From: Styela clava
Lineage: Eukaryota
Direction of reading: 5' to 3'
DNA length: 64,000 bases
Assembly (NCBI RefSeq): GCF_964204865.1
Contig: NC_135264.1
Span: forward strand, 1,984,001 to 2,048,000
Both the position numbers and the translations under genes were made by a program. Of the stretch, positions 1,538 through 63,677 are shown piece by piece; the stretch's first letter is position 1; each line of letters begins with the position of its first letter. The notes beneath the pieces were generated by a model, which had not been told where the DNA came from, did not search any database, and saw nothing but the letters and a program-made list of their open reading frames with translations.

Positions 1538-4500
1538 TCACTCGGACAAATCGCATGAGTAGGTCTTGCTATCCTCTGGTAGTCCATGCTCAATCAGCCA
1601 CTTGTAATATCCTTGTACACGGGTGTAGATACCCCAATAATTTGCTCGATTGCACCCATACCCGCCACTGGTTATGCCAGCCAAGTACCAATCACAATTG
1701 TTGCAGCGCTGACAAACCAAAGGACCCCCACTATCTCCCTAAAATGGATAAATAGGAACAGATGAAAAAATGAATAAAAGTGACTATCAGTCCAAAATAA
1801 TCTTTACTTTTCAATGAACTGCAAACTGCAAAAAAGACAGATATAAAGATGACTAAAGAACAGCTCTTAAATAATTATGGAAGAAAATACGTAATAAGTG
1901 TGTTACATGACAGGCGTCAACGCCTCCTCCAAGTATCCCAGCGCAAAGCATGATATCGTCGTTGAAAGTACCGTGCTCATTCCGTTTATATTCTTTGTAT
2001 TGTTTTCTACATTCCTCAGTAGACTGAATAAATACTGCTCCTTCTCTCAATCTAACGGGCTCCTTAGGAGCTCCTTCGTATTCTAAAAAATCCAAATATT
2101 TTCAATTCTTATCAGCTTGCATAATTGGAAAATACAGTACGAAAACGAATTAAATTTGTTTACCATATTTTCTACACCTATGTCAAATTATTTTTCAAGC
2201 AGCGTCTAATATTAAAGTCAATATAATGCAGTGTTTATTGTTAAGTACCTGCTAATATTACGACTGTATACTTGTTTATTTTTAGCGGTTGAATCACTCA
2301 TTTTATCGACCAATACGTGGATAGCGTAATTCAGAAGTATTTTTTTATAATTTACCCATTTATAATTTATATAATTTACTTATAATTTATTTTTTATAAA
2401 CTATTATTTATAATTTAATGATGTGTGTAATATGAGAAGCAATGTGCTATATATTCATGCATACTCCATGTGTTTGTGTGTTTTATTCCGTCTGATGGAT
2501 ATATATGAGGTGCAATGAGAGCGTATCACTTTGACATCGTGGTCTTTGACCTCGATGAAGACCTCGTTCAGCTTGAATAAAATCCCATATACACCTTTGA
2601 AATATTTCTCTTGTGGCTGATTTCGGCAAAATGGATGACGTAGATAAGAAATTGATTAAAAATATAGCTCACCATCTCCCCAACCAGTTACAATGCATTT
2701 TTGTCCAACAAGAGGTTTTTCTCCTAAAGGCATCGAAATTGCCTGGATTGTATCCGTATATTTTACGGTATCTCTTAACTAAAACAATACATTCGAAAAT
2801 GTAAGTTATCAACAAGATTGATGGTCAATAAATAACCTTCAAATGTGATGAAAAAGTTTGGATTTTCTCTGCAGTCACAATCTAGGCAAATTTATTCATT
2901 TTCTACAAACACCACAATTTATTATTTTCTTATATACATTGGCCGACATATTGAGAGAAAATCCAAAACCGATAGCATTCTACATCTTATAACCATTGGA
3001 AAAATGAATTTGCGACTTTATCGTAAAAGAATATTTTGTTTATTCGACACTACAAGCAAAATAGTAATTTTTAATATAAAATAGCCATAAATGTACTGGA
3101 TGAATGGGTTAAATACAATATGCACTGAGCTATAAAAACTGGCAACTCAAAGGTGGCGTATCACAGAAAAAATGGTACTCCCGTAGTATGTAAACCAAGA
3201 TGGCGGACACCGGAACGTAGTATTTGTACCAGGTTAGGGTTAGGACATAATTTCAGGTACAAATACTACGGGAGTCACTTGGCAACGACATGCAAGCCTC
3301 AACTTCATTTCTCGAGTTAAAAATCAGAGTTGAATATAGAGATGTTAAGTACCTCACTTGGGAATATACTGTGAACACAAGTTCGTGATCGAGTTTTCAG
3401 TAATATTTTATAATAATAACTGCTTGTTTCAAAACAGGGGCTTCTTTGAAATGTATATCGTTGTTTATTTTGTATTTTTATTCAAATACCGCATCGCTGT
3501 GATACTATGTCCGATTGACTAGAAAAAAAACATTTCCTTCGACTTCCACTCTTGTGGCATCGCTTTCTCACCAAGTTAGTACTTACATTAAAGTTCTGTT
3601 ATACGATTTTAACATAATGTTTGTTTGAAATAATGGAGAAATGCTTTGAGTAAACAAAGTAAGGAAACTCACAAAACATAGCTCACGGGCCTGCAACACA
3701 CAATCCAAAAGCAGTTGCTTCGGACGCGCCCTCACCACCCAAAGTGAGACCAACTTAGCTCGGAGATAACGGTAGAAACCTACGAGGGGATTACTGGACT
3801 ACTCGACGCCACAGTGTAATTTCATGTAATGGCGTGTAGGCTACTGCTTTTTCAGCCAACGAAGTTTTTACATCCGCTTTTCTAGTTTTAACCAAGTTAG
3901 TGCAAAATATTCAGATAAAACAGCTATTTTAAACAAAACGGGAAGAAAATATTTATGTGAAACAATTGTTTTGAAATGAATCTCTTTGTACAAATCCTTC
4001 GTTCTCAGTATACTACGTCATCGAAGGTCGTTTCCGAACCGCGGTCGATTTTAGTTGAAGCGGTTTTCAAAAACTAGGTCGATTTTACATAAATATAGTA
4101 ATCGTCAAGAATTCTGAAAAAATATACGAAATCAAAATTGTATGTGATAAACCACCTTTAAGTACCATAAAATCGGTAGAGAACGAACTCAAGAAAAGTC
4201 GACGAAGTAGCGTTTATATAATAAATTCACGTACTGTTATTAAGCGAATGTCATGGTCATGTCCTGTGGCAGAGCTATCATAATTCTCATGCCCTGCATT
4301 AGAGTCTACCTCCCACATTACAACATCGCCGTCGTAGGCGGAGTTTGTGCCGAGCAGTACTTTGACAGTCTCGCTCCTGTAAATTATATAAATGTTTTTG
4401 CGAATAAAATCTACAATGTTTGGGTTGTTTATTATGTGACAATCAAAACTCGAAAAAACACCAAATTTAAGTAAGCTATTTGAGATAACACATACGAATC

Positions 4501-7500
4501 CATAATATAACAAAATGAAGAAGTTTCCATCGGGTAGACATTGATCATAGTTTGAATGCAAGAGAGAAACAATGAAATAAAATTTCGATATTATATATTC
4601 AAACTTCTATTCGTCACCAAACAGCCAAACAGACTATAACACGGAAACTGCTAAACACGGAAATGTACTCTTTTACAATACTGCGCCGTTTATACTCACA
4701 AGTCACAATGCGCCGCAGTGATGACGTGTCTATTGCTGACAAGCACTCCACCGCAGAACCATTTGCCTCTTGCAAATAATAGAGCCTGCATACAAAAGCA
4801 GTTGAAATAGAAATCTCTATTGGCCTACCTAGATTATACATTTATAACATAATATATTCTCATCCAATTTTACAATTCCTTTTACCATCGGAGTGAGTAT
4901 TCATAAATATTTTGGTGTGGGAGGAATTTTTAATTATGCGTGTCAAAATTATTTTTACAGAGTGAGTTCTTGACTAGAAGTTTTAATTAACCTGTATCTA
5001 ATGAATACAACAAGCATAGAGTGTATTGGGAATAAGCAATATGGGATAACTGCATTGGATAACATTGGAGAAAGTCGAATTTTGTCAGAAGCTAGTAAAG
5101 CACTAAAAATATCAGTACCTGCCACGGCCATTTTCCGTCATCGGCTTCGTCACCGCCGACAATTTTAGTCGTTCCTGGTAGATCATAGCAACAACTGTCC
5201 TGGCCATAACGCAATTTATATCCAGTAGGACACTCCCCTGTGAGAACATAAAGTATAAAATTGTGTATGCCATAAATACGTTACAGAGAAGCGGTGCAAA
5301 AAAAGAATTTCTGAACGTTTGAAACAAAAACTGCATGTATACCCCTTTTGGTTTATATTTAAAGATTTAATTCAATACAAATATATAAATCATTTATTTC
5401 CGATGTAAATGTAAATTCCGGCAAACGGGTAAGACAGACTACCAATTAAGAACGCAATACTTTTCCCTATTTTTAACCTCAAAATACTGATAAAAAAGCT
5501 ATTTCTTATTGCAGGGTCTCCAACACGCGGCCCGAGGCAATTTTTTTCGGCGTCATGGTTGATATTTTTCCACAAAAAAACTAAAATAGTACGATGTCAA
5601 CTTTATTATGACGAAATAAACGAGTTTCGGTCAGATCATTGTGCCCAAAGAAAGGTTCGCAAAGTTAATTGCACACTCATGTCACATACTAGCATACTCA
5701 TATTTGCAAGCAGTTTTTTTTTCAACAACAAAAATTAACAAATCAGTCTTCCGCACACGACTAACGGACGAGCATTTGCATGCTGTCTTAGGACTAGCAA
5801 ACTAACGCAAAATAAGGCCGAACATCGAGTCTCTCACCGCTACACAACGGTGCCAAATACCCAGAACGAGTGATTGAATATGTTTCATGTCTCGTTTTGT
5901 GTAAGATTCAAGTGTAATTTTAACAGATACATCCAGATTTATTTTGTTATTTTTTGTGTATCAATTCTGTACCTAATTCGTTGGTTTGTGGCCCGCTTCG
6001 TCAATAAAGTTTAAAGTTCAATGACATATTTTGAGTTGGAGACCCCTGGCTTATTGAATGTAGCCAGCCGTTTACTCTGTAAGACTTCTAACCTATAATA
6101 CACTTTGGAGTGTGATTGAAATCTCCATCATCACACCATTGACATAGAGAATTTTTCATCGAACACTGGCTCTCAGTGACATGTTTGGTCGGAAAGCAGT
6201 TTATAGCGTTTGGATTCGTACAGCTTCCTCTTGCTCGAAGTTTCGAATAGTAAAATAGTTAGAACGTAATTGTATTTAGCAATGGTGGTAACTGAGCTAC
6301 AGTAATGCACTGTAGCATGTTAGATCTTATTGATTATATTCAATAACAGATTCAATTCGTCAGTTTTAAAGCATTTAATAACTGCAAAACAAATAAATCA
6401 CATACCTTTAAAATCTAAATATACTTTTAATTTTGAATTGCGAATAAATTTAATGATGTGCATTTGTGTAATGTGGATTTGTTAGTGACAATAGATATGT
6501 ATTATACTTACGAACTACTTGCAATTCACTTACACACATCATCTGTAAAATATAAATCAAATAACTATTTATTTGAAAAAAATTATTTCTGTATTACAGC
6601 TGAAATACGGATACTCAATTTTATATGTCAATGCTATTTTGTCAATGTATTAGCATCAAGTCAACAATATAATGAACCTGTTATTTCCTTATTGTACTAC
6701 AACTTTGAATTACTGTATTTGTCTCAAACCTTTTACACATTTTGGTGTGCTTTTAGGACACCAGGAACATCTATAAATGTTTAGACAGTCTTTTCCATTC
6801 GGGGGATTCAAGTTTTCTGTCGGCCAGCAATTATCAGCATCTGTGATGTCATCCCGACGACATGCTGCACCTTTAATAAAATATTTTGATCATTGTAGAA
6901 TAACTGCAATCAATTGTGCGTCATGACGTCATCAACTACGTGTCACAGAAAAAGACCGTATGGAAGACATTGTAGTACATTACAAATCTATTTTGTAATA
7001 TAGATATACGATGCGTCTGGTCATTGTTGAAGATGTTTCAAACTCAAAAACATTTGCTGTAACTGTCTAATCTCTAATGTACAAACATGATACGTTTGAG
7101 TAAAATTGGAATCTAAAATATCAACTGTATACGAACCTCTGATGCATTTGGGTTTGCCATTGGTACAATAATGACAGCCTTTTTTAGCACAATGCTTTCG
7201 GTTTCTGGCTTTACATTTCCATTCCTTCCTATCTTCAGTTGCGATCGCGCAGTTGTCAACAGCTATTATAATATAGATGTTTTTTTACTGAAATATTGTT
7301 CAATATGGCGCAACCTCATGTCTCCAATTAAAGGATGAAAAGGCAGATAATTCTTAATAGAACGAACTAAGTATATATAATTCATTTGACATTTAATAAC
7401 ATTAACCATTTAGCATCTGAATGGTGGCGTTTGTATTAAAGTTGTTTTGTACTTCAACCCGTATAGAAATTACTCACCTGTTGGTACAATTGGTCCATCT

Positions 7501-9247
7501 GAAAACATATTAACATTTATGAAAAAAGGAATAGACCATGATTTCAAATTGATTCAGCAATAACATTGAAACTCTAGATATTTTACTGACTTTGAGTATA
7601 AAGATATTAAAATACAACACTAATATGACTAAAATAGTTATTTTCTCATAAACATGCTGTTTTATAAAATTCATTTGATCTTTTCCAATTATGTCAGACA
7701 TAGAACAAATGGTCTACAATTTTTTATCTATATTTCCTATAATTGCTTGCCCCATTGTTTCATTTTAATAAAGAGAAAATGAATGAAACAAATTTTTTTA
7801 TTTTGTATAACTCTCGCACCTCTAACGCATTGGTATTGTATGTGATGTTTACAATAAGAGCATCCTTCCTTCTTACGGCATTTCTTAGGATTGACTGGTC
7901 CTTCTTCATCATTCCAGCAATTGTCTTCTGGTTGAAGATTTGTTCTTCTACATGCCTGCCCTAATATAATAAAGAATGTAAATAAATATACTGACTTTTT
8001 CTGTATATTTCATATTTGGTATAGGAATCTTGAATATTTTTAACATGTGACTAATTTTCAACACTGCTGCAGGGTACAGTGGATATTACGTAATCAGTGT
8101 TGAAATTTGGGAGGTTCGCGTTTAGGAATGTCGTTATTAGTCAACGAACCCGCTCTCGTTATCTGGTTTAGACGTTGGACGACAGTATCAAATGGGTAAC
8201 GCGCAGCTGATGACTAGATTTATACTTGCACTTCAAAAATATGTATTCAATTAGATTAATGTAAATCGCTATCAAAGTTTAGAATTCCATCAGTGTATAT
8301 TACATAATATCAGTGAAGTTTTATGTTGAAACTATTGCTTGGTATTCATGGATCAAGCCGATATAGAAATGATATATATATATATATGTTATTACGTCAG
8401 TATTTTCAAATATTTTATTCCAAAAATAAAGTATTGCAAAAACTGAATCTTATGAATCGTCGTTTTGGTTTAAAGGCCTGCGACATAAAAAATACATGAT
8501 TTATTAATTTTTATATGAATATTAGTGTTTAGCTAATTCAATAAAACAGTGGAAAATTTTTTTAATGGAAATTTCAATGCTCGTAACAAACAGTGTGAGG
8601 ATACATCCTTAACACTTACCATTTTTAGTATATTTTCATCGTATCTTTTCTCCAAACATTCCCGACAAATTCCAACAGTCTTTTTTATACGCTAAGTTCA
8701 AACACTTGTTCGTTTAAAGTTCAAAATATTTCTGTGCAAAATTACCTTCAACGCATATTGGCTTTTGACCCCCACAAAAATAACATCCTTTCCTGATACA
8801 ATCTTTTTTTCCGCGGGCATTGCATCTTGTTTTATCGCTTTTCTTTAGATCTGAATTGCAGTTGTCAATTGCTGAAAAGCAACAGCTAAATGTTAATGCT
8901 TATGAGCATACAAAACCTAATACAAATGAGAGGATTATACCAAAATCCGGTAAAACTTTTACGTCAACATCGCTATACGCGCTTACTTAGCGATTGTGAA
9001 TATCCAGGATTGGAGATAACCTGGGGACATTTACAAAACAGAAAATAGTATGGAAAATAATATGTGAAATACTCTTAACACAGGCTTCGGAATTATCAGG
9101 GTTTAAGCTTATGGCCGAATCTTTGCTATCACTTAGCACCTAGCACTTGCTATCATTATCAGAGATTTAGAAAATATAGGAAATCTTACCTGAAAAGCAA
9201 ACGGCAATAAATGCAGCAATACAATATATATATAGAAAAGTTTTCAT
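1538..9247 (-). CDS. Secreted modular trypsin-like (S1A) serine protease zymogen with four N-terminal six-Cys repeats
   Basis: Hand-spliced with GT-AG and consistent phases. Exons: 9247-9190 (signal [19 protein letters not shown]); 8871-8746; 7960-7820; 7498-7478 (21-nt microexon DGPIVPT); 7262-7137; 6870-6730; 5237-5119 (TTK|[15 protein letters not shown]); 4785-4700 (FCGG...ITAAHC); 4376-4235 (DHDIRLI); 2778-2673 (CIVTGWG); 2082-1907 (MLCAG...DACH); 1738-1538 (GDSGGPLVC...stop). His/Asp/Ser triad intact, Asp at the S1 position. Optional exon 8691-8620 is discussed in findings. Confidence 0.88.
3174..3283. mobile_element. Partial MITE, GGTACTCCCGTAGTATG family
   Basis: Near-identical to the left arm of the complete copy at 47674-47908 (ggtactcccgtagtatg..ccaagatggcggacacc..ggttagggtt..cgggagtcacttggc). 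Confidence 0.75.
5512..6048 (+). mobile_element. Non-autonomous hAT (Charlie/Buster-like) element with a transposase C-terminal remnant, in a protease intron
   Basis: TIRs cagggtctccaac / gttggagacccctg; 8-bp TSD tcttattg / gcttattg; internal segment reads [22 protein letters not shown], like a hAT dimerisation domain. Confidence 0.8.
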
Positions 9248-10260
9248 GTTCCAATCATTTAAAAACTCTCGATGCGACTTTTCCCGGCACTAGACTTCGT
9301 TTTGTTCTTACTTGTTTCACGATTAATTAAATATGTTTCTACAAAAGAATTTAAGTTATTATAAAATATTATTTCGTATCTGGTAAAATAAAAATTCGGA
9401 ATAAAAAAATACTGATCTTTAATGCATTTTATCTGTATGTACCTTCTTTTAATGAATCATAGTCGCCAGTAAGTCTTCCCCCACGTATGGAAGGGAAACA
9501 ACAGTATTTATAACAAAAATAGAAAGAGGCACCATATAAGCCAGTGAGTGCACCGTCTACTTGACTTAGAATAAAACAAGTCAATTAGCAGGTTTTGTCG
9601 CCTACCGGGCGTAGTAACAATTTTGCAATTAACCTCATCGATCAGCTTAAGCAATCAAGTCGGAGGAACATAGAGTCGGAAGACTTTAAAGTTTTAAATG
9701 AAAACAAAAAAGAAAACACCAAATCTTTCGTTGCGAAAAGAGCTTAACTAGAGCAATTCTCTTTCAAGTTAGAAGCTTTTGTAAGCGAGTGATCTTGAAG
9801 ACATATAACCTCCATATATATATAAATATTTATTAGAATTTGATATGAGAACACACGCTGTCTGCGATCCGATATCTCTTGTTTTTTCAAAATAGTCCTC
9901 CTCTAGAAATAGTTTATGCCAAAATTATCTAGCTCGTCAGCATTGTTCAAGAAAACTGTTCAAGACTGCAAAGGCACCTGGGTGAACCGAGACAAGAGCA
10001 TGGCCGATTGAAGATTCGAATTTTATACCGGACAATCGCGTTAATTGTTGGTATATTGAGAGTTGCGCCCCTTTTTTGTTGCTACAACGCACAGGGAGCA
10101 GAATCATCTGCATATTTCCCATCTTTAATAGCCACAGCTGGAGTACAAAGTTACAATTTACGACATAACTTCACAGCCTTTTACTCTATTAACTCCTCTA
10201 CCATACGGAAGGGGGTATTTTGAATCGCAATCATTTTATTGGATCTCCGCTCAAGGAGAC

Positions 10261-10809
10261 NNNNNNNNNNNNNNNNNNNNNNNNNNNNNNNNNNNNNNNN
10301 NNNNNNNNNNNNNNNNNNNNNNNNNNNNNNNNNNNNNNNNNNNNNNNNNNNNNNNNNNNNNNNNNNNNNNNNNNNNNNNNNNNNNNNNNNNNNNNNNNNN
10401 NNNNNNNNNNNNNNNNNNNNNNNNNNNNNNNNNNNNNNNNNNNNNNNNNNNNNNNNNNNNNNNNNNNNNNNNNNNNNNNNNNNNNNNNNNNNNNNNNNNN
10501 NNNNNNNNNNNNNNNNNNNNNNNNNNNNNNNNNNNNNNNNNNNNNNNNNNNNNNNNNNNNNNNNNNNNNNNNNNNNNNNNNNNNNNNNNNNNNNNNNNNN
10601 NNNNNNNNNNNNNNNNNNNNNNNNNNNNNNNNNNNNNNNNNNNNNNNNNNNNNNNNNNNNNNNNNNNNNNNNNNNNNNNNNNNNNNNNNNNNNNNNNNNN
10701 NNNNNNNNNNNNNNNNNNNNNNNNNNNNNNNNNNNNNNNNNNNNNNNNNNNNNNNNNNNNNNNNNNNNNNNNNNNNNNNNNNNNNNNNNNNNNNNNNNNN
10801 NNNNNNNNN
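10261..10809. other. Assembly gap (N run)
   Basis: Contiguous n characters; the ORFs spanning it are artefacts. Confidence 1.
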
Positions 10810-11022
10810 ATGTAGCGTCTTAACGGCTGGACCAATCTGGATGAAATTTTCCATATGAGTTTTTGTGCGTTTTATGGAAAGTCCGGATGGAGGTTTCGTT
10901 TCCATGGAAACAACGAAAAACGAGCCGATCGTCAAAATGAACTGGCGGGCTTCAAGCAAAGGCGGAGATCCAACTGGGCGCCTACCGGCTTGTTCCGGTG
11001 TAAGTCAGTAAACACTTCGAAC

Positions 11023-11667: not shown

Positions 11668-14600
11668 CAGTGGCGGCGCGTGGTCATTTTGACAACCGGG
11701 GCAAGCTACTGCGGGACCAAGTCACCCCCATCTACGGGGACAGGATGAGCGCTGTAAGTTCTCCCATCATTTTATGAGTATAAAAACCATTCCATCAGTA
11801 ACAACCAATCGGCAAAAGCGACAATTTTTAACGATAAGAAAGTGTCTTTAAAACCGGTCCAAGTCAAGGGATAATAAATATAGACATAGTTTATTTTGAA
11901 ACCTCTTTCAAAAGGAAAGGCAATATTTACCCAGATAAATACAATGACATATTAACAGAAACTTCGGGAAAGCAGGCAAAACCTAAAATAAGGTTTAAAA
12001 CGTTACTATGAAGAAAGGAAAGGTAATGCAAAGATAAGGACATGCGTCGCTCACTCATAGATATATATGCTGCTAGACTTCTACTGCTTGAACATATATG
12101 CAGCACGCCGCGGCTTCTTGGAAGCAAAATGCTCAATAACGCACTGATTAAAGTCATGCATCCCAGAAATAACGTCTCTGTGAATGGATAAAACAGCCAA
12201 GGAATTTAATCTATCTTGCTTCATTGTGTTTCTGAGATACGTTTTAATACGCTTCAGCGTGCTGAATGTTCGCTCTGCGTCGGCGGAAGAAATAGGCGTC
12301 GTCAAAATGATGTCCAGAAATTTTGCAGACGCCGCAAAGGTAGTTACTAGAGTGTTATCTATGAGGAACCCATAGAGCGCGCAAGGTGATGTGATGTTCA
12401 AAAAAGTTTGATTGGTGTATATACATCGCAATTCATTTTCCAATTTACCCACGTTCATCATGGGGTAAAATTTGGAGACAGTAGCCAACAAATGGATGGG
12501 AAATTGACGTGCAAATTTTGAAAAATTTTTGGGGTTCATCAAAGAGAACGCGGCAAGGTGTTCAGTGCGCAGACGATCGCCTATTTGATTCACCAGAACG
12601 TCACAGCATTCCTTTGCAGACAAAATCAAACGCTGCGTTGTTTGCCCGCGGCGTAAAGAAGCACTCCATGTGTCGTCGTATTTTATTGTTTCCCGGATAC
12701 GAGATACAGCATCGCAGAAGTCTGAAATACACGACTGCACAGACGCTCCATCCATTAGCCTTGACTGCAATGCGCCGTATAATACATCCACGTGATAGAA
12801 TATTGTGGAGAAAAAAGCGAGAAAAAATGAAAACTCACCATCTTCTAGCAGACGCTTTAGACCTGCCGCCTCCCTCACAGAGCGTTCGTCCCAAACCGGA
12901 GAGCTCTGAATGCCATTGAAACACTCAATGAGATCAGACCTAATTTCGGACACGCCCTAAACCACGCGTGATTGGAAGTTCCAACGTGTTGGTGCACAAG
13001 CTGGGAGACGGCGGCTACATATCTGGCGAAGGAGGTCAGAGCGCTTCGGCGAAACGGAAAAAAATGAAGAAAACTCCGAAACATTTGCAAAAAATATACG
13101 GACGAGAGGGGTATCAAGACACATATTTTTAATAACGAGGTTAAATTGGTGTGCATAACAATGTAAAAAATGCGCATGAGGAAAATCTTCTTTTATATAA
13201 ACTTGAACATCATGTTTCGACCCACTCATGACTGCCGCGCCGTCATAAGTTTAACTATCAATTTTGACTTCGCGTTGTAAGGCTGTAACACTTCTTTCAG
13301 TACAGCCGATATCCCGCAAGCCGTGCGATCAACGATTGGTACAAAGCTGTGAAATCTCTCGGTAGGTTTACCATCTTTCACAAACCGAAAAATCACAGCC
13401 AGTTGGGAAACGCACGTGATGTCAGTTGTCTCGTCAGACTGAATCGAAAGGAACTGGCAATTCTCAATTCCCAGAGCCAAATGTTGTAAATAAATTTTAT
13501 ACATTGAGTCGAGCAAATCATTTTGGATATCCTTAGATGTCCCTTTCGAAACAGTTGCGGCATCAAGATGATCTCTCAATACTGTATCTAGGGATGCGGT
13601 GTATTCCACCAAAAATACCCCTCTATTAGAAGAGCCAGCCCGTTCATCGTGCCCACGGAGGGTCAGCTCGTGACAACCAATGAACTTCAAAACATCTATC
13701 AATCGACCGAGAACATGGCGGTTTTTCTCGACGTTTTGTTTGTGCCGACGAATAGAAACCGCGCGTCCTTCATCCAACTGTGCTGCAATATTAACATTTC
13801 CGAATGTTCGGTATTTTACTGCATTGTCCAGATGCTCCATAGAAGATTGATGATCCCTGGCATGCTCGGAAAGATGTTTAAGATCTCTAAAACCAAATTT
13901 ACATCAACGTGAGTCACGGGCGGTAGCAAAAAGTAGGCAATAAAAACAAAAAAATGCATTTTTGTCCTCGCTGTAACACAACCATTCGTGTTTTTTATAC
14001 CAAGTTTCTGCGCAGAATGTACGCCGACGCTTTCCTCCGTCATGGGATTGTTCCAGTGAACAATTTTTTGGTTGATAAGGCCCAAGACGTTGTACCTCTA
14101 ATTTTTGTTCCAGCGGCAGCTGCGAAAACGGAGTGCGAAGTAGTGCATCAACCTTATTCATTATGAGGTCTAAGGCTAAGAAATGCGAAGCCGGAAAGAA
14201 GTGAGGAGCTCAAAAGGAATGTGGAAAATCGAAAGCAAATGGACTAAAGGTCTCTAACTGATTCAAATAGCGAAACAAGCGACAAAAACGAAGGCGAGGA
14301 AACTATCAACTCTTCAAGCAACCAACGAACGAGAAGGAATGCGTGAATATGTCAACAAGTTGTTGTAAGAAACGTCGGCATTGTGTCGTCATAATTTCGG
14401 GGCTAGCCCCGATCGGCCCCGATGATTTAGTAGAAGAAACAGAAAACAAACCAGACAAACGCGGCGAGTGGAAGATAAAAGAAAGAATACGATATACAAT
14501 GAGCAACCGGGGCAAAATCGGCGTCGCCCCGTCGACGTTCGGCGAAGGCTTTACGAGCGAAAAATGAACCATGTCGGGAGAATATGGCTAGTGTAGACAG

Positions 14601-43321: not shown

Positions 43322-44865
43322 TATTGGCAATGAGTTGCACTAATCTTCCTGGAACAAAAAGTATTAAAATTACAAAACTATTCCGCCATATTTAAAAAGC
43401 TGCATCGATTTTTTACTCCAAGTCTTTGTATCGATTTTCGAGTGAGATAAAATCTTGCGCCACGAAAGAGCATACGCCCAAGGCCGTCATTGTGGTTGTA
43501 AATTGAAACGTAATAAACTGATGTAGGTTGTGATGTCATTTATACCAGGTGTATAACAATACATACAATCAGAAAAAAAAAACATATTTACAGGGTACGA
43601 ATTTGAAACCCAACTTTACCTCTCCTAGTGTAAATGGGATCAATTTAATCGATGTTCATTCATTTTTCCACGGTAATACAGTGTAAGCGAGAGGTTGGTA
43701 AACTTTTGTCATTTGCAGACAAACAGTAAATATTGTATGACTTGGCAAGCATGAATATTTTTTGCATGTAATAGTCAGATAAGAAATGCACAAAGCGTTT
43801 CGCACTAATGCTATTTTTTGCGTGGTTAGTTAAATTTAAATTGAGATTTCTCTCGAGAAGGTCTGAATATCCAAAAATAATATAAATCTCAAATAGAATA
43901 TAGATTATTAAATTTTCCAGTTTAATAGGCTTCATTTGAGAATTGTCTGCGACAAAATTAATGTTAACATCATTCGGAGTACTCAGAAGAACGAAAACCA
44001 GAAAATTGAGAAGAGAATTCATTCGTAACTCCTTTTCCCCAGACATGAAATCTTTGTGGTTTCCTGGGTTTGACAAAATTAACGAAGTTATTAAATAAGC
44101 ATTTCTCGAATGCGCGTTTGAGTCATTCAGGGTCGCGAAATTCAGTACAACACTTTATTTCGCTTCTGGGAAATGGAAAATAAAGACATTCCATTGCGTA
44201 CACTCCTCTCTAGCAACCTGTGCTATTGTCTATATTCAAAATGATATTCAAAATTCAAATATATATATATATATATATTCTGTTCTTTTTTAGATATTCC
44301 ATCAAAATCTGATGTATTAGGGCTTTCGATCATTTTATGAAGCTGCCGAGGCTGCAAAAGATGTGGCGCAGCTTGTACTGCCTGGCTAGATTCCGTTGAT
44401 ATTTATGTCGTTAATAAGTTAAATACTAAATCTTCTGTTATTATTTGTTCAAGTCAGAGCGCGTGATGCAATTTTTTTCATATCACTGTTATCTGAATAA
44501 ACAATAAGCGCGTGATTGTGACGCGGATTTGTGTCGTGCTTGATAGCTTCAATGAAATATAAAAGTGCTGCCTGAATATTTAAAAGCACAAATGTAGCTA
44601 AACGCATTTGGGAGTAAGACACGTGTTTGTGACTCGCTAATTGCAAATAGTCCTCCATACTATTTTAGTGACCTTTAATAGTGCTTCGACTCATTTCATT
44701 ATTAGTAGTTACAAAGGGTGCAATTTCAGGCAGTGTGTCGTTAAAGCTTCGTTAGTTCGATTATTATATTTTGCAACACGTTTTATGATTTTTTCATGAT
44801 TTATGTTTGTTGTTCACCTTTTGTCTTTAGATATTTGAGAATCGCTATACTCTCACCCACACATC

Positions 44866-46401
44866 ATGAAAATTAACACTTATGTCATCATAATTATGAT
44901 GACTGAATTTTGCGTAGGTGCCGCGATGGCGGATTCTCGTCCTAATATTTTGTTCATATTAGCCGATGACTTTGGATTCAATGATATTGGATATCATGCC
45001 AGTGAACATGAATCAGCAATAAAAACTCCTCATTTGGATTTCTTGGCTGAGAACGGAATAAAACTCGAAAATTATTACGTTCAACCAATTTGCTCGCCAA
45101 CCAGGAGTCAACTAATGAGTGGTCGTTATCAGATTCATACAGGTTTGCAGCACGGAGTGATTCGACCTTCACAACCAAACGCGTTGCCAATTCAAAATAA
45201 GATCATGCCTGAACAATTAAAAAATTGTGGCTACGATACACACATGGTGGGAAAATGGCATCTTGGTTTTTATGAAGAAAAATTTTTGCCATGGAAAAGA
45301 GGTTTTAACTCGTATTTTGGGTATTTAACCGGAGCTGAGGACTACTATACTCATGAGCGATGTTTCAATGGAATGTGCGGAGAAGATATGTGGGATTCTG
45401 AAATTGGACCCGTGAATAACACATGGGGGAATAACACATATTCCGCTCATTTATTCGCTAGAAAAGCAATTGAGGCAATTGACAAACGTGATTCTACAAA
45501 ACCGTTGATCATGTATTTGGCATATCAATCTGTACACGGGCCTTTGCAAGTGCCAGATAAGTATACTGAAATGTTCAAAGACATTAAAGATAAAGCACGA
45601 AGAACTTACGCTGGAATGGTGTTAGCATTAGATGAGTCAGTTTAGAATGTGACTCAGCACTTAGCTAAAGTTGGTATTCTGGATAACACTATCATTGTGT
45701 TTTCCACTGATAACGGCGGCCAGACTATGGCCGGTGGTAATAACTGGCCACTAAGAGGGAGGAAAGCCACTCTTTGGGAAGGTGGCGTTAGAGGAGCGGG
45801 ATTCATGTATGGTAAACTACTCGAGGCTAAAGGTGTGACACATAAGGGGCTGTTACATGTTTCAGACTGGTTTCCGACACTACTACAAGGTGTCGCAATG
45901 TGTTCAACATTAAATGGTACCCAGCCATTAGATGGATACAATCAATGGGACGCCATTCGTCAAAAGGAATCATCGCCCAGAACGGAAATTTTACATAACA
46001 TTGACCCTTTGTATAGTGCCAATTCAAATGAGACAGAAATGCAAAACATTATTATCAATGGATTTGACATTAAGGTTCACGCAGCAATTCGAAGTGGACC
46101 TTGGAAATTACTAACTGGAAATCCGGGCTTTGACCAATGGGTAAAACCTCCCGAATCCGAACAAAATGGAGTTGGCCAAATGACCTATGCTAATTCGTCC
46201 TCAAATGTAATGTTGTTCAACATAGAGAATGACCCTTATGAACATAACGAAGTATCCGAAATGAATCCGACAATAGTTCAAAATCTTCTTAGTAAACTCG
46301 CTAAATATAATTCAACTGCCGTTCCTGTTAGATATCCACCAATGGATGCGAAGGCGAATCCCAAAATGCATGGTGGCTTCTGGAGCCCTTGGATGAAATA
46401 A
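44866..46401 (+). CDS. Arylsulfatase B/I/J-like sulfatase, intronless, interrupted by one in-frame TAG (possible null allele or base-call error)
   Basis: Signal-like N-terminus, PNILFILADD, CSPTR (formylglycine motif), VGKWHLG, STDNGG, NWPLRGRK, WEGGVR. Both ORF halves are in one frame, separated only by TAG at 45643-45645. Confidence 0.85.
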
Positions 46402-58622: not shown

Positions 58623-59145
58623 ACTTGCAAACATGGCCCGATTGTTGCCATCAACTTATATTTTGGCCCAATAAAATACTGAGATGTTGACTACTAAACT
58701 AGGCATTTTGTAATTTTTCTTTTTAATGCTTCATTATGCACTTCAAATACTGAAATAAATTGAAATATGCTAGTCCAAGCTTCCAATGTTTAACATTCTG
58801 ACATGATACCGAAACGCCTGCTTGAAATAAAGCCAGGGGACCAATATGTCTTATATATTTTATTTGGTATTGTCCCCAAACTACATTGTCTAACTGCAGG
58901 AAGCATGCTGGCATGCAAAAGAATTGGGCCAACACTGATGCGAATACTGATTCTACTATTTTCAGCTTTGTGCATGTACAAGACATACCGATAATCAATA
59001 AATTGTGTACTCAAATTATTGAAAATATTTTACAGTGGCCACAACCGTAATCGAATCCGTTTGAATTCAATTACTTTGCATCGTTCATCCCTTTGAAAGT
59101 ATTGAGTTTAAACAATACATATATATTTTTAGAAAATAATACATT

Positions 59146-62100
59146 ATGGATGTGGATGTAGATAATAAACCATCAAAACAACACAAAGTAAGAAAAGCTG
59201 GCAGGAAAGCAGAAAAAAGGAAACTGAAGGAAGACAACAGCAGAGAGGATGCAACTACTAAAAAGAAAAACCCAAAAGCGTATGCAATCCAAAGTGTTAA
59301 CAAATTAGCCAAGTCGTTTCATCGGGCACAAGACATCAAAACGAAAAAACATCATATACCTGTCGTTGATAGAACCCCACAGGTGCCACCACCTGTCGTT
59401 GTTGCTATAGTTGGTCCACCAAAGGTTGGTAAAACGACTTTGTTACAATGTATTATAAAGAATTATACAAAGCAAAAACTGACTAATATTCAAGGACCAG
59501 TCACAGTCGTATCTGGTAAAAATCGTAGACTCACAATTATCGAATGTCCGAACGACATTAGTGCTATGATTGATATTGCAAAAATTGCGGACTTGGTACT
59601 TTTACTTGTTGATGCAGGATTTGGATTTGAAATGGAAACTTTTGAATTTTTGAACATCTGCCAAGTGCATGGTATGCCAAAAATAATGGGTGTTTTGACT
59701 CATTTGGATGCAATTGACAATGCGAAGAAAATAAAGAAAACAAAAAAATTATTAAAACATAGATTTTGGACTGAAATATACCAAGGTGCCAAGTTGTTTT
59801 ATTTAAGCAGAATGGTCTATGGTGAATATCAAAAAATGGAAATTCATAATTTATGTCGATTTATCAGCGTAATGAAGTTCAGACCTTTGATATGGAGATC
59901 AACACATTCATATTTATTAACTGATAGAATGGAAGACCTAACCGATCCTGAAAAAATTCGACAAGATTCTATTTGTAATCGGAATATATCATTGTATGGT
60001 TACGTCCGTGGAATGCCACTAAAAAATCTTTCATCAATTCATATTCCTGGTGTCGGGGATCAAATTATTAAAAATATCTCATTTCTTCCGGACCCGTGCC
60101 CTTTGCCCGAAAAGGGAGAAAAAAGACAAAGGCGTACTCTGGATGTAAAAGAAAGACTTATTTATGCTCCTATGTCTGGAGTTGGTGGAATTATTTATGA
60201 TAAGGATGCTGTTTATATTGATGTGCAAAGCTCGACACAAAGGAATAATGGACAAGTCGGTGAAATAGAAACTATTGATAACGAAATAGTAGATGATTCA
60301 ATGATTGGAACAATGACATTATCAAAACAAACTATTGATCATAAAATGGAAAAGAGTCAATTTTCACTTCTGGAGGGAATGAAACCAATTACGAACAACG
60401 AAGCAGAAAGTATGATTGAAATGCCTATGGAAGAAAAAACATTTGATGTTGAAACAAATCGTGTTAGGAGAAGAGCAGTTTTTTCTATGAAAGATGGTGA
60501 ACAGCAAGATTCTACATCAGACGATGATGAGGAAGGTTATCAAAGTGGAGATTCCGATGATGAAAGTTGTAACGAATCTGAAAATGGAATAGAAGAACCA
60601 AATGGCATTTCTGAAAGTAAACTGAAATGGAAAGAAAATTTGAAATTGAAAGCTCAAAATTTGTATATTCACAGGCAGAAAATGATGAAAAATCTTCCAA
60701 AGTTGGTTTATGGTAAAATTGAAATCAAATCAGACACTTCTGAGTCCGAGGAAGATGAAAAAGTCGCTGGTGATTTATTTGTCGTCAAACGGAATATGAA
60801 AGCAAAGAAAAATACGAAAGACAATAAAGACTGCAACATAACTTTGCGGCGACAACATGGGGATGAAAATAGTGAAGATATACGCCAAAGTATCAGTGAT
60901 TGTTTTGTCACTGGTGATTGGAATCAAGATGAAGACGCCTCTCACTTATTACAAGAGGATGAAAATTTGTATGGTGATTTTGAAGATTTGGAAACAGGAC
61001 AATCTTTCACATCTGGAGCTAAAGATAATGAAAGTGATTCTGATGATGTTGATACAGTTAGAATTAAGAAACCCGATGACCGTGAAGCTAGATTGAGAGA
61101 AAAACGTCTTGCCAGAAAACGAAAAATGAAAGAAATATTCGATCGGGAATATGACGTCAGCCAAGAAAATGGTGAAGTAACAACCGCAAGTGGAAGCCTT
61201 TTCGACTCTGTCAAAACTGAACTGGCTGAACAAGCGAAATTGAACCGTGCTGAATTTGAGGATATGGATGACGCAACTAGAGTACAATATGAAGGCTACA
61301 GACCCGGAATGTATGTTCGCATTGAACTGCACGATATTCCTTGTGAGTTTGTAAAATATTTCAATCCAACATACCCAGTTATAGCAGGTGGTTTGTTGGC
61401 AACTGAAATTCAAACAGGCTTTATCAGAGTTCGAGTTAAAAAACATCGCTGGTATCCGAAAATTTTGAAAACACGTAATCCAATGATATTTTCTATGGGT
61501 TGGAGAAGATTTCAATCTTTGCCGATGTATTATATGGAAGATCACAATTTGAGACAGAGATATCTTAAATATACACCACAAAATATGCATTGTTGGGCTG
61601 TAATGTGGGGTCCTCTTTGCCCACAAGGTACAGGATTCTTAGCAATCCAAGCTCTTGCAAATAGAGACGTTCCTAATTTTAGAATCACTGCCTCTGGGAC
61701 TATTTTAGAATCTGATAAAAGTACAAAATTGGTTAAAAAATTGAAGCTTATTGGTTATCCATATAAGATATTTAAAAATACCTGTTTTGTGAAAGGAATG
61801 TTCAACTCATCTCTTGAAGTTGCTAAATTTGAGGGAGCAGCCATTCGAACTGTCAGCGGCATACGAGGACAGATAAAAAGAGCGGTTACTGATGGCCCGA
61901 ACAATAGCGGAGGATCCGAAGCCGGATCTTTCCGAGCATCTTTCGAAGATCGTATATTGATGAGTGACATAGTGTTCTGTCGTACCTGGTGTCCAGTTGA
62001 TGTTCCAAAATTTTTTTTGAATTGTGCAAATTTAATGTTGCCCGACAAAGATAGTTGGAGTGCAATGAAAACTGTCGGACAACTGCGTCATGAAAAAGAT

Positions 62101-62496
62101 CAGAAATTACAACCGAACGAAGACTCCCTTTATAGACCAATCGAAAGAGAAACTAGGGTTTTCAATCCTGTTGTAATACCCAAAAAATTACAAAAAGAAT
62201 TACCATATAAAGTAAGACCGAAGTTACGAAGAGAAAAAATAGAAAGCAGACAAGAAGGAATGATGAAAGTTGCGATTGTCAGAGAACCGAAAGATAGAAA
62301 AATAGTCGAACTTATGACAGCATTGCGTGCGCTTGATCATGACAAAAAGAAAAAGACCAAACAAGAGAAGAGGGTCAAATATCTCAAGCACAGAGAAATG
62401 TTAGAAAAAGAGGAAATCAAAAATAAATGGAAACATAAAGAAGCAAAAAGGAAAGCTTACGCAATGCTGAATCAAAAACAGAAGAAGAAAAGATAG
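59146..62496 (+). CDS. BMS1: Ribosome biogenesis GTPase BMS1, single coding exon, 1116 aa
   Basis: KKHHIPVVDR, P-loop GPPKVGKTT, HRFWTEIYQGAKLFYLS, KKHRWYPKILK, VAKFEGAAIRTVSGIRGQIK. Confidence 0.97.
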   Translation: MDVDVDNKPSKQHKVRKAGRKAEKRKLKEDNSREDATTKKKNPKAYAIQSVNKLAKSFHRAQDIKTKKHHIPVVDRTPQVPPPVVVAIVGPPKVGKTTLLQCIIKNYTKQKLTNIQGPVTVVSGKNRRLTIIECPNDISAMIDIAKIADLVLLLVDAGFGFEMETFEFLNICQVHGMPKIMGVLTHLDAIDNAKKIKKTKKLLKHRFWTEIYQGAKLFYLSRMVYGEYQKMEIHNLCRFISVMKFRPLIWRSTHSYLLTDRMEDLTDPEKIRQDSICNRNISLYGYVRGMPLKNLSSIHIPGVGDQIIKNISFLPDPCPLPEKGEKRQRRTLDVKERLIYAPMSGVGGIIYDKDAVYIDVQSSTQRNNGQVGEIETIDNEIVDDSMIGTMTLSKQTIDHKMEKSQFSLLEGMKPITNNEAESMIEMPMEEKTFDVETNRVRRRAVFSMKDGEQQDSTSDDDEEGYQSGDSDDESCNESENGIEEPNGISESKLKWKENLKLKAQNLYIHRQKMMKNLPKLVYGKIEIKSDTSESEEDEKVAGDLFVVKRNMKAKKNTKDNKDCNITLRRQHGDENSEDIRQSISDCFVTGDWNQDEDASHLLQEDENLYGDFEDLETGQSFTSGAKDNESDSDDVDTVRIKKPDDREARLREKRLARKRKMKEIFDREYDVSQENGEVTTASGSLFDSVKTELAEQAKLNRAEFEDMDDATRVQYEGYRPGMYVRIELHDIPCEFVKYFNPTYPVIAGGLLATEIQTGFIRVRVKKHRWYPKILKTRNPMIFSMGWRRFQSLPMYYMEDHNLRQRYLKYTPQNMHCWAVMWGPLCPQGTGFLAIQALANRDVPNFRITASGTILESDKSTKLVKKLKLIGYPYKIFKNTCFVKGMFNSSLEVAKFEGAAIRTVSGIRGQIKRAVTDGPNNSGGSEAGSFRASFEDRILMSDIVFCRTWCPVDVPKFFLNCANLMLPDKDSWSAMKTVGQLRHEKDQKLQPNEDSLYRPIERETRVFNPVVIPKKLQKELPYKVRPKLRREKIESRQEGMMKVAIVREPKDRKIVELMTALRALDHDKKKKTKQEKRVKYLKHREMLEKEEIKNKWKHKEAKRKAYAMLNQKQKKKR

Positions 62497-63149
62497 GAAA
62501 TTTAGTTACACTTGAAGAGCTTCTCATTGTATCTTATATGCTAAATTAAAGCATGAAAGCTATTCAGAATTTTCGACTTATAAGGGCATTAACTAAATAG
62601 ATACCAAATAGAAACAATTTTCTTTTACATTTATTAATATCATCCAATTGTATTTTCCACTAAGGCAGCCAGTGTTATGTTGATTGATCCATAGTAATTT
62701 TTTGAAAAGAGAGATATTGCATGAAAGGCAGTGTTTCTATTCTTGCATATTCTTTGAAAATACTTTTAGGGGATTTATTTGTGTTTCTTAGCTAAATTTT
62801 TCGAATAATGTTAATTGAATAAACAAACAGTCTACTGTCAGGTAGCTTACATGTCATTTTTTTCTCGTACTGCATCTTGTTTAAAAGACATGTATTTGTG
62901 TCAAAACTAAGGTTATTTGCATACTACTGTATTTGAAATGGTATTGTAATTATTGATGCCATCATAGACTAATGCTAAATTGTGCTTTCATGTATGTCTT
63001 TCTCCCTCCTCTGGATAGGAACAGTCCTATTTCACTAAGTGTCTTATTATTTTCTTTGCCTAGATGATTACCTAATTTCAGGCACATTAAATTAACATTT
63101 GAGTACTGATTGGCATGAAGACTGAAGTTGTTTTGTGAATATTACAAAC

Positions 63150-63677
63150 ATGGGAAGACGTTATTACTGTGAATTCTGCGATCGGGCATTTTTAGACAAT
63201 CTGAATGCGAGAAAGAAGCATGTTGTGAGCAGTACGCATCAACAGTTGCGGAAGGCCTATTATGACAAATTCAAAACTAAGCAACAAAAGCTGAATGACG
63301 AACTTGCAAAGCCACGAATATGCAAATATTACCAGAATTCAGGGAATTGCCAATTTGGGTCTAGTTGCCGATACCGTCATATTAGCGATGTCGAAATAGA
63401 GAGAATAAAGAAAGAAATTAATGAAGAATCAAAAAAAGATGAAATGAGCAATAGAACTGTCAAAAACTGGCTTTCTTTAAACAAACAAAAACAAATCAGC
63501 AAAGAAAAGCTTGAGAAAACTGGTGGTGCTGCGGTCTCTGAGCGGAAAATCCCTGACATCCCTCAAACATCAACTGTACTCCCAGATTCTTTGAAGCAGT
63601 TGCCCTTTCTTCCTTTGTCGATGCAACCACCTCCAGAAGATGGTTGGCCACGACTTAATGAGGTTGAATGGGGATGA
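63150..63677 (+). CDS. ZMAT5: Zinc finger matrin-type 5 (U11/U12 snRNP 20K), single coding exon
   Basis: MGRRYYCEFCDRAF..RKKH..H (U1C/matrin finger), CCCH finger CKYYQNSGNCQFGSSCRYRH, C-terminal LPLSMQPPPEDGWP..EWG. ATG at 63150. Confidence 0.93.
   Translation: MGRRYYCEFCDRAFLDNLNARKKHVVSSTHQQLRKAYYDKFKTKQQKLNDELAKPRICKYYQNSGNCQFGSSCRYRHISDVEIERIKKEINEESKKDEMSNRTVKNWLSLNKQKQISKEKLEKTGGAAVSERKIPDIPQTSTVLPDSLKQLPFLPLSMQPPPEDGWPRLNEVEWG

What the first reader, a model, noticed from the sequence alone, without database searches (positions are those of the whole stretch)
6730..8871. Serine protease with an unrecognised exon-encoded six-cysteine repeat arranged A-B-A-B
Seen: four phase 1-1 exons. 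A1 and A2 are both 126 nt ([42 protein letters not shown]; [42 protein letters not shown]). B1 and B2 are both 141 nt ([47 protein letters not shown]; [47 protein letters not shown]). All share C-x10/11-C-x7..13-C-x4/5-C-x2-C-x6/7-C. Known: trefoil domains end C-x4-CC and PSI domains contain C-x-W-C; this module resembles both and fits neither, nor clip, kringle, EGF or LDLa spacing. Inference: an AB exon pair duplicated internally, giving a basic, possibly lineage-specific recognition module on a trypsin zymogen.
Basis: partly seen in the sequence, partly recalled or inferred. Interest (0 to 1): 0.8.

Follow-up and report, generated by a model that had tools for sequence, protein, structure and literature searches.

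The report
Trefoil-derived repeats on sea-squirt protease
A sea-squirt trypsin-like protease gene carries alternating cysteine-rich modules, one type of which is a strongly diverged trefoil domain; this makes an unusual but not fundamentally new protein design.

Summary
On the minus strand there are four phase 1-1 exons: A1 and A2 of 126 nt, B1 and B2 of 141 nt.

This matches Styela clava RefSeq XP_039257699.1, 530 aa.

The module is not wholly unrecognised.
- Type A is a diverged trefoil (P-type) domain. 7 of 9 A modules of the gene family hit Pfam Trefoil and 2 pass its cut-off.
- An A profile built without the window's sequences finds real Styela trefoils: 12 of 16, against 3 of 400 shuffled.
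- In A the trefoil's hallmark CC is replaced by C-x-x-C.
- B and C resemble A only in their C-terminal halves and match no known family.

A-then-B pairs occur at 8 loci in this genome, 7 of them with protease exons. An exhaustive search of 1.84 billion proteins found no carrier outside S. clava.

The structure predictor was closed, so the fold is untested.

The parts
9190..9247 (-). Exon 1: start codon and signal peptide (19 codons plus 1 nt), ends in phase 1
   Evidence: Translation. Joint 8871|9190 in contigs of X1, X2 and X4. Signal peptide judged by eye only.
8746..8871 (-). Exon A1: 126 nt, phase 1-1, six-Cys module of type A (diverged trefoil)
   Evidence: Scores 32.8 bits against an A profile built without window sequences. 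No Pfam hit of its own.
7820..7960 (-). Exon B1: 141 nt, phase 1-1, six-Cys module of type B
   Evidence: Joint with A1 in X1 and X2. Scores 43.9 bits against the leave-out B profile.
7478..7498 (-). 21-nt linker exon (7 codons), phase 1-1
   Evidence: Joints 7498|7820 and 7262|7478 in X1 and X2. Splice sites.
7137..7262 (-). Exon A2: 126 nt, phase 1-1, type A module
   Evidence: Pfam Trefoil at 11.9 bits, E 0.21, covering profile positions 1-40 of 43. Scores 40.5 bits against the leave-out A profile.
6730..6870 (-). Exon B2: 141 nt, phase 1-1, type B module
   Evidence: Joint with A2 in X2. Scores 58.8 bits against the leave-out B profile.
6534..6542 (-). 9-nt micro-exon. If its donor is read through, the frame stops after two more codons, giving the 209-aa product.
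   Evidence: Nine letters lie between 6233 and 6730 in contigs of X1 and X4. The X2 contig runs on 81 nt past 6542 into the intron. Splice sites. P0013.
6093..6233 (-).
   Evidence: Joints to the micro-exon and to the IVGG exon in X1 and X4. Present in RefSeq isoform X1 and absent from X2.
5119..5237 (-). Activation exon: a three-Cys linker, the Lys|Ile-Val-Gly-Gly cleavage site and the start of the protease domain
   Evidence: Joints 5236|6092 and 4784|5118.
1538..4785 (-). Five further protease exons: 4700-4785, 4235-4376, 2673-2778, 1907-2082, 1538-1738 including the stop
   Evidence: tblastn of RefSeq models onto the window. Splice sites. Pfam Trypsin at 192 bits on P0003. His, Asp, Ser and the Asp of the specificity pocket read by eye in P0015.

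Best explanation
This is one gene of the sea squirt Styela clava. It encodes a secreted trypsin-like zymogen whose N-terminal region is built from one-exon cysteine modules in the order A-B-A-B-C.

Type A is a strongly diverged trefoil (P-type) domain. It keeps the first four cysteines, the Arg before Cys2 and the Gly-Cys4 context. The adjacent Cys4-Cys5 doublet has become C-x-x-C and the last loop is shorter. Types B and C share only A's C-terminal half (C-x2-C ... Cys-Ile/Val). They are probably further-diverged siblings of A, but that is not shown.

Inferred mechanism:
- The A-B pair is the functional unit. Pairs are separated by short Pro-rich linkers, while A and B abut directly.
- Like trefoil domains elsewhere, the pairs probably bind glycans or mucin-like matrix and so place the protease on a substrate.
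- Cleavage after Lys before IVGG activates the protease. Three cysteines in the linker match three extra cysteines in the catalytic domain, so the modules may stay disulfide-tethered after cleavage.

What is shown: the gene structure, the splicing, the family and the A-trefoil similarity. What is inferred: the fold, the ligand, the tethering and the function.
For: Splicing as one mRNA:
- GT..AG joints link all exons from the signal peptide to the protease, through overlapping contigs of X1, X2 and X4.
- The structure matches RefSeq XP_039257699.1 of 530 aa.

A is related to trefoil:
- Pfam Trefoil is hit by 7 of 9 A modules, at 24.5, 21.8, 19.5, 15.9, 15.2, 12.4 and 11.9 bits against a cut-off of 21.
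- hhalign of the A profile against 16 Styela trefoil exons gives probability 47.5% and E 1.9e-4 over 28 columns spanning Cys1-Cys4. That score was reached by 1 of 200 column shuffles and 2 of 200 Cys-fixed shuffles.
- A Styela trefoil HMM ranks A modules in its top 8 of 21 modules.
- An A profile built without window sequences scores at least 7 bits on 12 of 16 real trefoils, 3 of 400 shuffled trefoils and 0 of 8 PSI exons.
- In the ESM Atlas's stored models, trefoil clusters are the nearest structural neighbours for two paralogues: TM 0.30 for P0015 residues 20-262, and TM 0.46, 0.41 and 0.43 for P0002 residues 24-118.

Window A1 and A2 belong to this A family: 32.8 and 40.5 bits against the leave-out profile.

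Family: A-then-B at 8 loci, with protease exons next to 7 of them.
Against: - The window's own A1 has no Pfam hit, and A2 reaches only 11.9 bits (E 0.21).
- The CC doublet that defines trefoil domains is absent from all A modules.
- B and C show no significant trefoil similarity: hhalign 1% and 10%, and 0 of 8 B modules hit Pfam Trefoil.
- A genome-wide Pfam Trefoil scan listed 77 exons but none at these loci at E <= 0.01.
- The Atlas TM scores are all below 0.5 and the models have a mean pLDDT of only 0.60.
- No structure could be predicted here.
- The newest RefSeq annotation splits the locus into a 209-aa repeat-only protein and a 298-aa protease. One contig, from X2, supports the read-through that gives the 209-aa form.
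- The runs are only guessed to be RNA.
- The ligand, tissue and function are untested.
Confidence: 0.68

Rival explanations
1. A, B and C form a new lineage-specific cysteine fold unrelated to trefoil. The similarity of A to trefoil would then be convergence of cysteine spacing and a few flanking residues.
For: - No Pfam family reaches its cut-off on any of the window's five modules.
- There is no match to PDB sequences with either the A or the B profile.
- The CC doublet is missing.
- B and C have no trefoil signal.
- Only S. clava proteins were found among 1.84 billion representatives.
Against: - Two paralogous A modules pass Pfam's own Trefoil cut-off, and 7 of 9 have Trefoil as a hit.
- The similarity does not rest on cysteine positions alone. 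Cys-fixed shuffles reach the score in only 2 of 200.
- The similarity is reciprocal: 12 of 16 real trefoils against 3 of 400 shuffled.
- Atlas structural neighbours are trefoil clusters in two separate queries.
Confidence: 0.17
2. The repeat exons and the protease exons are two separate genes: a small secreted A-B-A-B protein of 209 aa and a separate kallikrein-like protease, as in the newest RefSeq annotation.
For: - The RefSeq models XP_077965481.1 (209 aa, stops two codons after the 9-nt exon) and XP_077965479.1 (298 aa) are separate.
- The X2 contig reads 81 nt through the micro-exon donor into the intron.
Against: - Contigs of X1 (910 nt) and X4 (1255 nt) join B2, the 9 letters, C and the IVGG exon and run on into the protease.
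- The 298-aa model starts at a Met inside module C and has no signal peptide.
- The older RefSeq isoforms are fused.
- Paralogues P0002, P0010 and P0005 have the same fused design.
- A 9-nt exon is easy for an annotation pipeline to miss.
- Both products may exist side by side.
Confidence: 0.1
3. The modules are diverged PSI (plexin-semaphorin-integrin) domains.
For: - There are sub-threshold Pfam hits: PSI_Plexin-B at E 0.0095 on B2, covering the last 14 residues only, and PSI_integrin at E 0.093 on C.
- 2 of 8 B modules hit PSI_Plexin-B.
- B and C carry a C-x-W-C-like motif.
Against: - hhalign of the A, B and mixed profiles against 8 Styela PSI exons gives 0.5-1.3% probability; C gives 1.7%.
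- The matches cover only the C-x2-C stretch.
- The modules have six cysteines, not eight.
- The A profile scores at least 7 bits on 0 of 8 PSI exons.
Confidence: 0.03

Closest known systems
Trefoil (P-type) domain, Pfam PF00088, as in TFF peptides, frog integumentary mucins and ZP4
   Same: - About 40 residues with six cysteines, encoded by one exon each. The Styela trefoil exons also look phase 1-1 from their splice-site context (no RNA check).
- Cys1-x10-Cys2, an Arg three residues before Cys2, Cys3-x4-Cys4 with Gly before Cys4, and a Pro two residues before Cys6 (alignments).
- Occurs in tandem arrays on secreted proteins.
   Different: - Cys4 and Cys5 are separated by two residues, mostly aromatic, instead of being adjacent.
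- Loop 2 has 7 residues rather than 9, and loop 3 has 6 rather than 10. The Trp before Cys6 is absent.
- The window's own modules fall below Pfam's cut-off.
- It is attached to an S1 protease. None of the 120 listed relatives of this protease domain carries PF00088, and I recall no described case of that combination.
Ciona Epi-1, a tunicate-specific secreted protein with P-type trefoil domains
   Same: It is a tunicate protein with a signal peptide and trefoil domains, and no clear orthologue outside tunicates (passages read in bioRxiv 10.1101/2024.09.30.615758).
   Different: Epi-1 has canonical trefoil domains and no protease domain. I did not compare the sequences.
Mosaic trypsin-like proteases, such as the type II transmembrane serine proteases, coagulation factors and plasma kallikrein that RefSeq's automatic names refer to
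   Same: - The C-terminal S1 domain has an intact His-Asp-Ser triad and an Asp in the specificity pocket.
- There is a basic residue before IVGG.
- Non-catalytic modules are encoded by phase 1-1 exons.
- There are cysteines in the activation linker.
   Different: - The N-terminal modules are not kringle, EGF, LDLa, SRCR, apple or CUB (no Pfam hit at E <= 10).
- There is no transmembrane segment, only a signal peptide.
- The catalytic domain is at most about 41% identical to any protein listed from outside S. clava.
TRAMP, the retinoic-acid-inducible modular protease of the styelid Polyandrocarpa (Ohashi et al. 1999)
   Same: It is a modular serine protease of a styelid ascidian. I saw it only as a citation in PMC8270879.
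   Different: I could not see its domain composition, because the paper is not held. Any relationship is untested.

Membership tests
Trefoil (P-type) domain, PF00088 | Score at or above Pfam's gathering cut-off (21 bits) | tested here: not met
   Window A1 has no hit and window A2 scores 11.9 bits. Among the 9 A modules of the family, 2 pass (24.5 and 21.8 bits) and 7 hit at E <= 10. B: 0 of 8. C: none.
Trefoil (P-type) domain, PF00088 | Adjacent Cys4-Cys5 doublet within C-x9/10-C-x9-C-x4-C-C-x10-C (spacing recalled from memory) | tested here: not met
   All 9 A modules have C-x-x-C at this place, and loops 2 and 3 are shorter.
Trefoil (P-type) domain, PF00088 | Reciprocal profile similarity to bona fide trefoil domains, above controls | tested here: met
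   For type A only. hhalign gives 47.5% and E 1.9e-4, a score reached by 1 of 200 and 2 of 200 shuffles. The leave-out A profile scores at least 7 bits on 12 of 16 trefoils, 3 of 400 shuffled trefoils and 0 of 8 PSI exons.
Trefoil (P-type) domain, PF00088 | Three-loop fold with disulfides 1-5, 2-4, 3-6 | not testable with these tools
The only lead is that trefoil clusters are the top structural neighbours of the ESM Atlas's stored models, at TM 0.30-0.46 and model pLDDT 0.60.
PSI domain, PF01437 and relatives | Profile match over the domain; eight cysteines including C-x-W-C | tested here: not met
   Only sub-threshold matches to the last 14-27 residues. hhalign gives 0.5-1.7%. The modules have six cysteines.
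Peptidase S1 (trypsin), PF00089 | Full-length profile match, catalytic His/Asp/Ser, activation site | tested here: met
   Trypsin scores 192 bits over profile positions 1-220 of 220 on P0003. The triad motifs, the Asp six residues before the catalytic Ser and the Lys-IVGG site were read in P0015 and the window.
Clip, kringle, EGF, LDLa and other usual protease modules | Any Pfam match | tested here: not met
   No such family at E <= 10 on the five modules, nor at E <= 0.1 on the whole RefSeq proteins P0002, P0003 and P0005.

The most novel reading that the evidence does not exclude
The A-B pair may be a styelid-specific 12-cysteine supermodule, a trefoil-derived lectin half fused to a new half. 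This one gene may make two products by use or read-through of a 9-nt micro-exon: a small secreted A-B-A-B protein that acts like a tandem trefoil factor, and the same array tethered to a trypsin-like protease that it aims at mucus, tunic or egg-coat glycans.
Probability: 0.15. Interest if true: 0.55.

Novelty: new variant of a known kind. Interest (0 to 1): 0.36.

Why it matters
- It shows how a well-known small domain can drift beyond the reach of its family model. Moving one cysteine by two residues takes the trefoil module below the standard Pfam cut-off, and the drifted form then spreads by exon shuffling.
- It adds trefoil-type modules to the set of domains found on trypsin-like proteases, a combination I did not find described.
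- For annotation, it explains about 230 unassigned residues in a family of about eight Styela clava loci. It also flags a gene that the newest RefSeq build splits in two, probably because of a 9-nt exon.
- Wider significance is modest. The family was found in one species only, and its function is unknown.

Tried and rejected
- **PSI domain.** Weak Pfam hits to the C-x2-C stretch only, and profile-profile probability near 1%. Rejected.
- **PDB by sequence.** A and B profiles gave only noise, E >= 1.1.
- **Word-based protein search.** The N-terminal region of P0015 found only the gene itself among 36 candidates. The tool is too insensitive here.
- **JGI metagenome contigs.** 197 pattern matches, none confirmed.
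- **ESM Atlas feature search.** No usable hit.
- **Other hits of the exhaustive B-profile search.** These are P0001, P0004, P0006, P0007, P0008 and P0009. They are partial-profile, many-stretch matches in repetitive proteins of an insect, algae and metagenomes. I read P0007 and P0009 and ran Pfam on P0004, P0006 and P0008. I did not inspect P0001, P0004, P0006 or P0008 residue by residue.
- **Tree of A-B pairs.** Unresolved, with long branches, so the order of the duplications is left open.
- **C-type census.** A two-sequence profile found only its own two members.
- **Papers.** Six searches found nothing on this gene, this module or a trefoil-protease fusion. Hits for 'trefoil' plus Styela concerned beta-trefoil cytokines. 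Ohashi et al. 1999 is not held. No supplements were consulted.
- **Earlier-findings look-ups.** Searches gave nothing on this family.
Full report
**What is there**

The finding lies on the minus strand.
- A1: 8746-8871, 126 nt
- B1: 7820-7960, 141 nt
- A2: 7137-7262, 126 nt
- B2: 6730-6870, 141 nt

Each exon has an AG acceptor and a GT donor and is in phase 1 at both ends.

A scan of all frames for cysteine-rich open stretches showed a fifth module, C, at 6093-6233. Upstream is a signal-peptide exon (9190-9247). Downstream are the IVGG exon (5119-5237) and five more protease exons down to a stop at 1538.

I only added their lengths: 1593 nt, or 530 codons plus a stop.

**Transcripts**

Nine runs hold 7-17% of the sampled words of window 5100-9300. 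Exons make up about a fifth of that stretch. These runs are only guessed to be RNA.

Contigs of four of the runs were laid on window 4200-9300. They show joints whose skipped parts all end CT..AC on the plus strand, which is GT..AG on the gene's strand.

| Joint | Links | Runs |
|---|---|---|
| 8871\|9190 | signal exon to A1 | X1, X2, X4 |
| 7959/60\|8745/6 | A1 to B1 | X1, X2 |
| 7498\|7820 and 7262\|7478 | a 21-nt exon between B1 and A2 | X1, X2 |
| 6868\|7135 (cut +2) | A2 to B2 | X2 |
| 6233\|6730, nine letters between | a 9-nt micro-exon at 6534-6542 | X1, X4 |
| 5236\|6092 | C to the IVGG exon | X1, X4 |
| two further joints | within the protease | – |

- No single contig spans the whole gene. 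The chain rests on overlapping contigs.
- The fused B2-to-protease part comes from two runs of one study.
- One X2 contig runs 81 nt past the micro-exon into the intron. That form would stop two codons later.
- X3 gave mostly unspliced pieces.

**Public models**

An exhaustive profile search with eight B modules over 1,835,955,588 representative proteins gave 9 hits at E <= 0.001.

Three are real family members, all from Styela clava:
- the product of this gene (XP_039257700.1, 483 aa, without exon C)
- a 664-aa paralogue with three A-B pairs plus C plus protease
- a 562-aa paralogue with one A-B pair, a Ser/Thr-rich linker and a protease

The cluster of this gene also holds isoform X1 (XP_039257699.1, 530 aa, with C). 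It further holds two models from a newer annotation that split the locus: a 209-aa protein ending just after the micro-exon, and a 298-aa protease that starts at a Met inside module C.

The fused form has contig support, the read-through form has one contig, and both may exist.

The other six hits are partial, many-stretch matches in repetitive proteins, and I set them aside (see Tried and rejected).

**The family in this genome**

Profiles of A and of B were searched over the whole 377-Mb assembly.
- A: 14 clear modules plus one weak.
- B: 12 clear modules plus one partial, and three weak matches.

They lie at 8 loci, always A then B in strict alternation, with one to three pairs. The loci are:
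- this gene
- two inverted copies on contig C6
- C19 near 1.479 Mb, 2.306 Mb, 10.319 Mb and 12.452 Mb
- C9 near 7.306 Mb

Protease exons lie beside 7 of the 8 loci.
- The copies near 1.479 and 2.306 Mb carry stops or rearrangements.
- The C9 copy has a degraded A and no protease within 9 kb.

A abuts B directly, whereas successive pairs are separated by short, often Pro-rich linkers. So the pair looks like the unit.

This gene's two pairs are 43% identical, no more than to pairs of paralogues (35-49%), and the tree is unresolved.

**What the modules are**

On the window's five modules Pfam gives only sub-threshold hits:
- Trefoil on A2 (E 0.21)
- PSI_Plexin-B on the last 14 residues of B2 (E 0.0095)
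- PSI_integrin on C (E 0.093)

On the whole RefSeq proteins only Trypsin is found. PDB sequences give nothing.

The picture changes when the family is used.
- Of the 9 A modules, 7 hit Pfam Trefoil and 2 exceed its 21-bit cut-off at 24.5 and 21.8 bits. No other family recurs.
- I collected 16 canonical trefoil exons and 8 PSI exons from the same genome.
- hhalign of the A profile against the trefoil alignment gives 47.5% probability and E 1.9e-4. It aligns Cys1 to Cys4, the Arg before Cys2 and the Gly-Cys4 context.
- Only 1 of 200 column shuffles and 2 of 200 shuffles that kept the cysteine columns fixed reach that score.
- A trefoil HMM ranks A modules first to eighth among 21 modules.
- An A profile built from the seven non-window modules scores window A1 and A2 at 32.8 and 40.5 bits.
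- The same profile scores at least 7 bits on 12 of 16 real trefoils, against 3 of 400 shuffled trefoils and 0 of 8 PSI exons.

The ESM Atlas's stored models of two paralogues have trefoil-containing clusters as nearest structural neighbours. The TM scores are 0.30-0.46 and the models are poor (pLDDT 0.60), so this is a lead only.

I conclude that A descends from the trefoil domain but has left its formal definition.
- The adjacent Cys4-Cys5 has become C-x-x-C.
- Two loops are shorter.
- The Trp before Cys6 is gone.

Moving Cys5 two places along a strand would keep it on the same face. That is my inference, not a result.

B and C are less clear.
- They resemble A in the C-terminal half only: hhalign 85% over 22 columns for A against B, and 68% over 13 columns for C against A.
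- They show no significant trefoil or PSI similarity.

**Distribution**

I found no carrier outside S. clava.
- The library did contain other tunicates: Ciona savignyi and Clavelina lepadiformis appear among relatives of the protease domain.
- None of the 120 listed relatives carries PF00088.
- A pattern scan of JGI metagenome contigs found nothing.
- Single diverged modules scoring under about 41 bits would have been missed.
- Other styelid genomes could not be searched.

**Function**

The protease has the catalytic triad motifs and the trypsin-type Asp (read).

The linker before IVGG has three cysteines. The catalytic domain has three extra ones, two in a conserved C-Q-R-C-x-x-C stretch and one near the C-terminus. 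These features are conserved in the paralogues, so a disulfide tether is plausible but unproven.

The A modules are basic, with pI 9.1 and 9.5. B1, B2 and C have pI 8.6, 7.8 and 6.9.

By analogy with trefoil domains, whose glycan and mucin binding I recall from the literature, I propose that the pairs target the enzyme to a glycan-rich matrix. Nothing here tests that.

**Literature**

Six full-text searches found no description of this gene, this module or a trefoil-protease fusion.

Passages of a preprint on Ciona Epi-1 show that canonical trefoil proteins are known in tunicates. The paper on the styelid modular protease TRAMP is not held.

**Verdict**

- The thing is a diverged variant of a known domain in an unusual, apparently lineage-restricted architecture, already present in RefSeq as an unstudied prediction.
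- The structure predictor was closed, so the fold remains the key open test.

Noticed in passing
G000 genome-wide: At least 77 exons in the Styela clava assembly match Pfam Trefoil above its cut-off. Many lie in tandem clusters, for example on contig C4 near 11.6 Mb and on C18 near 13.46 Mb. This is a large trefoil repertoire for an invertebrate chordate.
   Followed up: partly
window 6534-6542 and RefSeq models P0013/P0014: The newest RefSeq annotation splits this gene at a 9-nt micro-exon. It gives a 209-aa repeat-only protein and a 298-aa protease that lacks a signal peptide. The older annotation had fused isoforms of 530 and 483 aa.
   Followed up: yes
window about 5550-5740 (intron between exon C and the IVGG exon): Contig depth is many times that of the exons, and many contigs run off into unlike sequence here. 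This looks like a dispersed repeat inside the intron.
   Followed up: no
window 12084-14209, minus strand: Long open frames with a hAT dimerisation domain (PF05699, E 4e-10) and DUF4371 (E 4e-12) suggest a hAT-type transposase remnant or domesticated copy.
   Followed up: partly
window 59140-62493, plus strand: A single uninterrupted 1118-codon frame encodes a BMS1/Tsr1-type ribosome-biogenesis GTPase (RIBIOP_C E 2e-89, AARP2CN E 2e-26). It is apparently intronless in an otherwise intron-rich region.
   Followed up: partly
window 44839-45642 (+) and 63126-63674 (+): There is a sulfatase-domain exon (PF00884, E 3e-38) and an open frame with a U1-type plus CCCH zinc finger. These are ordinary neighbours.
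   Followed up: partly
L048 (G000:C19:1478500-1488400) and L008 (C19 near 2.306 Mb): Two family copies are decaying. At 1.479 Mb the IVGG-type exon lies on the opposite strand with a stop, and the last protease exon has two stops. At 2.306 Mb one A has lost a cysteine and B is broken by a stop.
   Followed up: partly
window 10262-10810: A run of 549 N, either an assembly gap or masked. I left it untouched.
   Followed up: no
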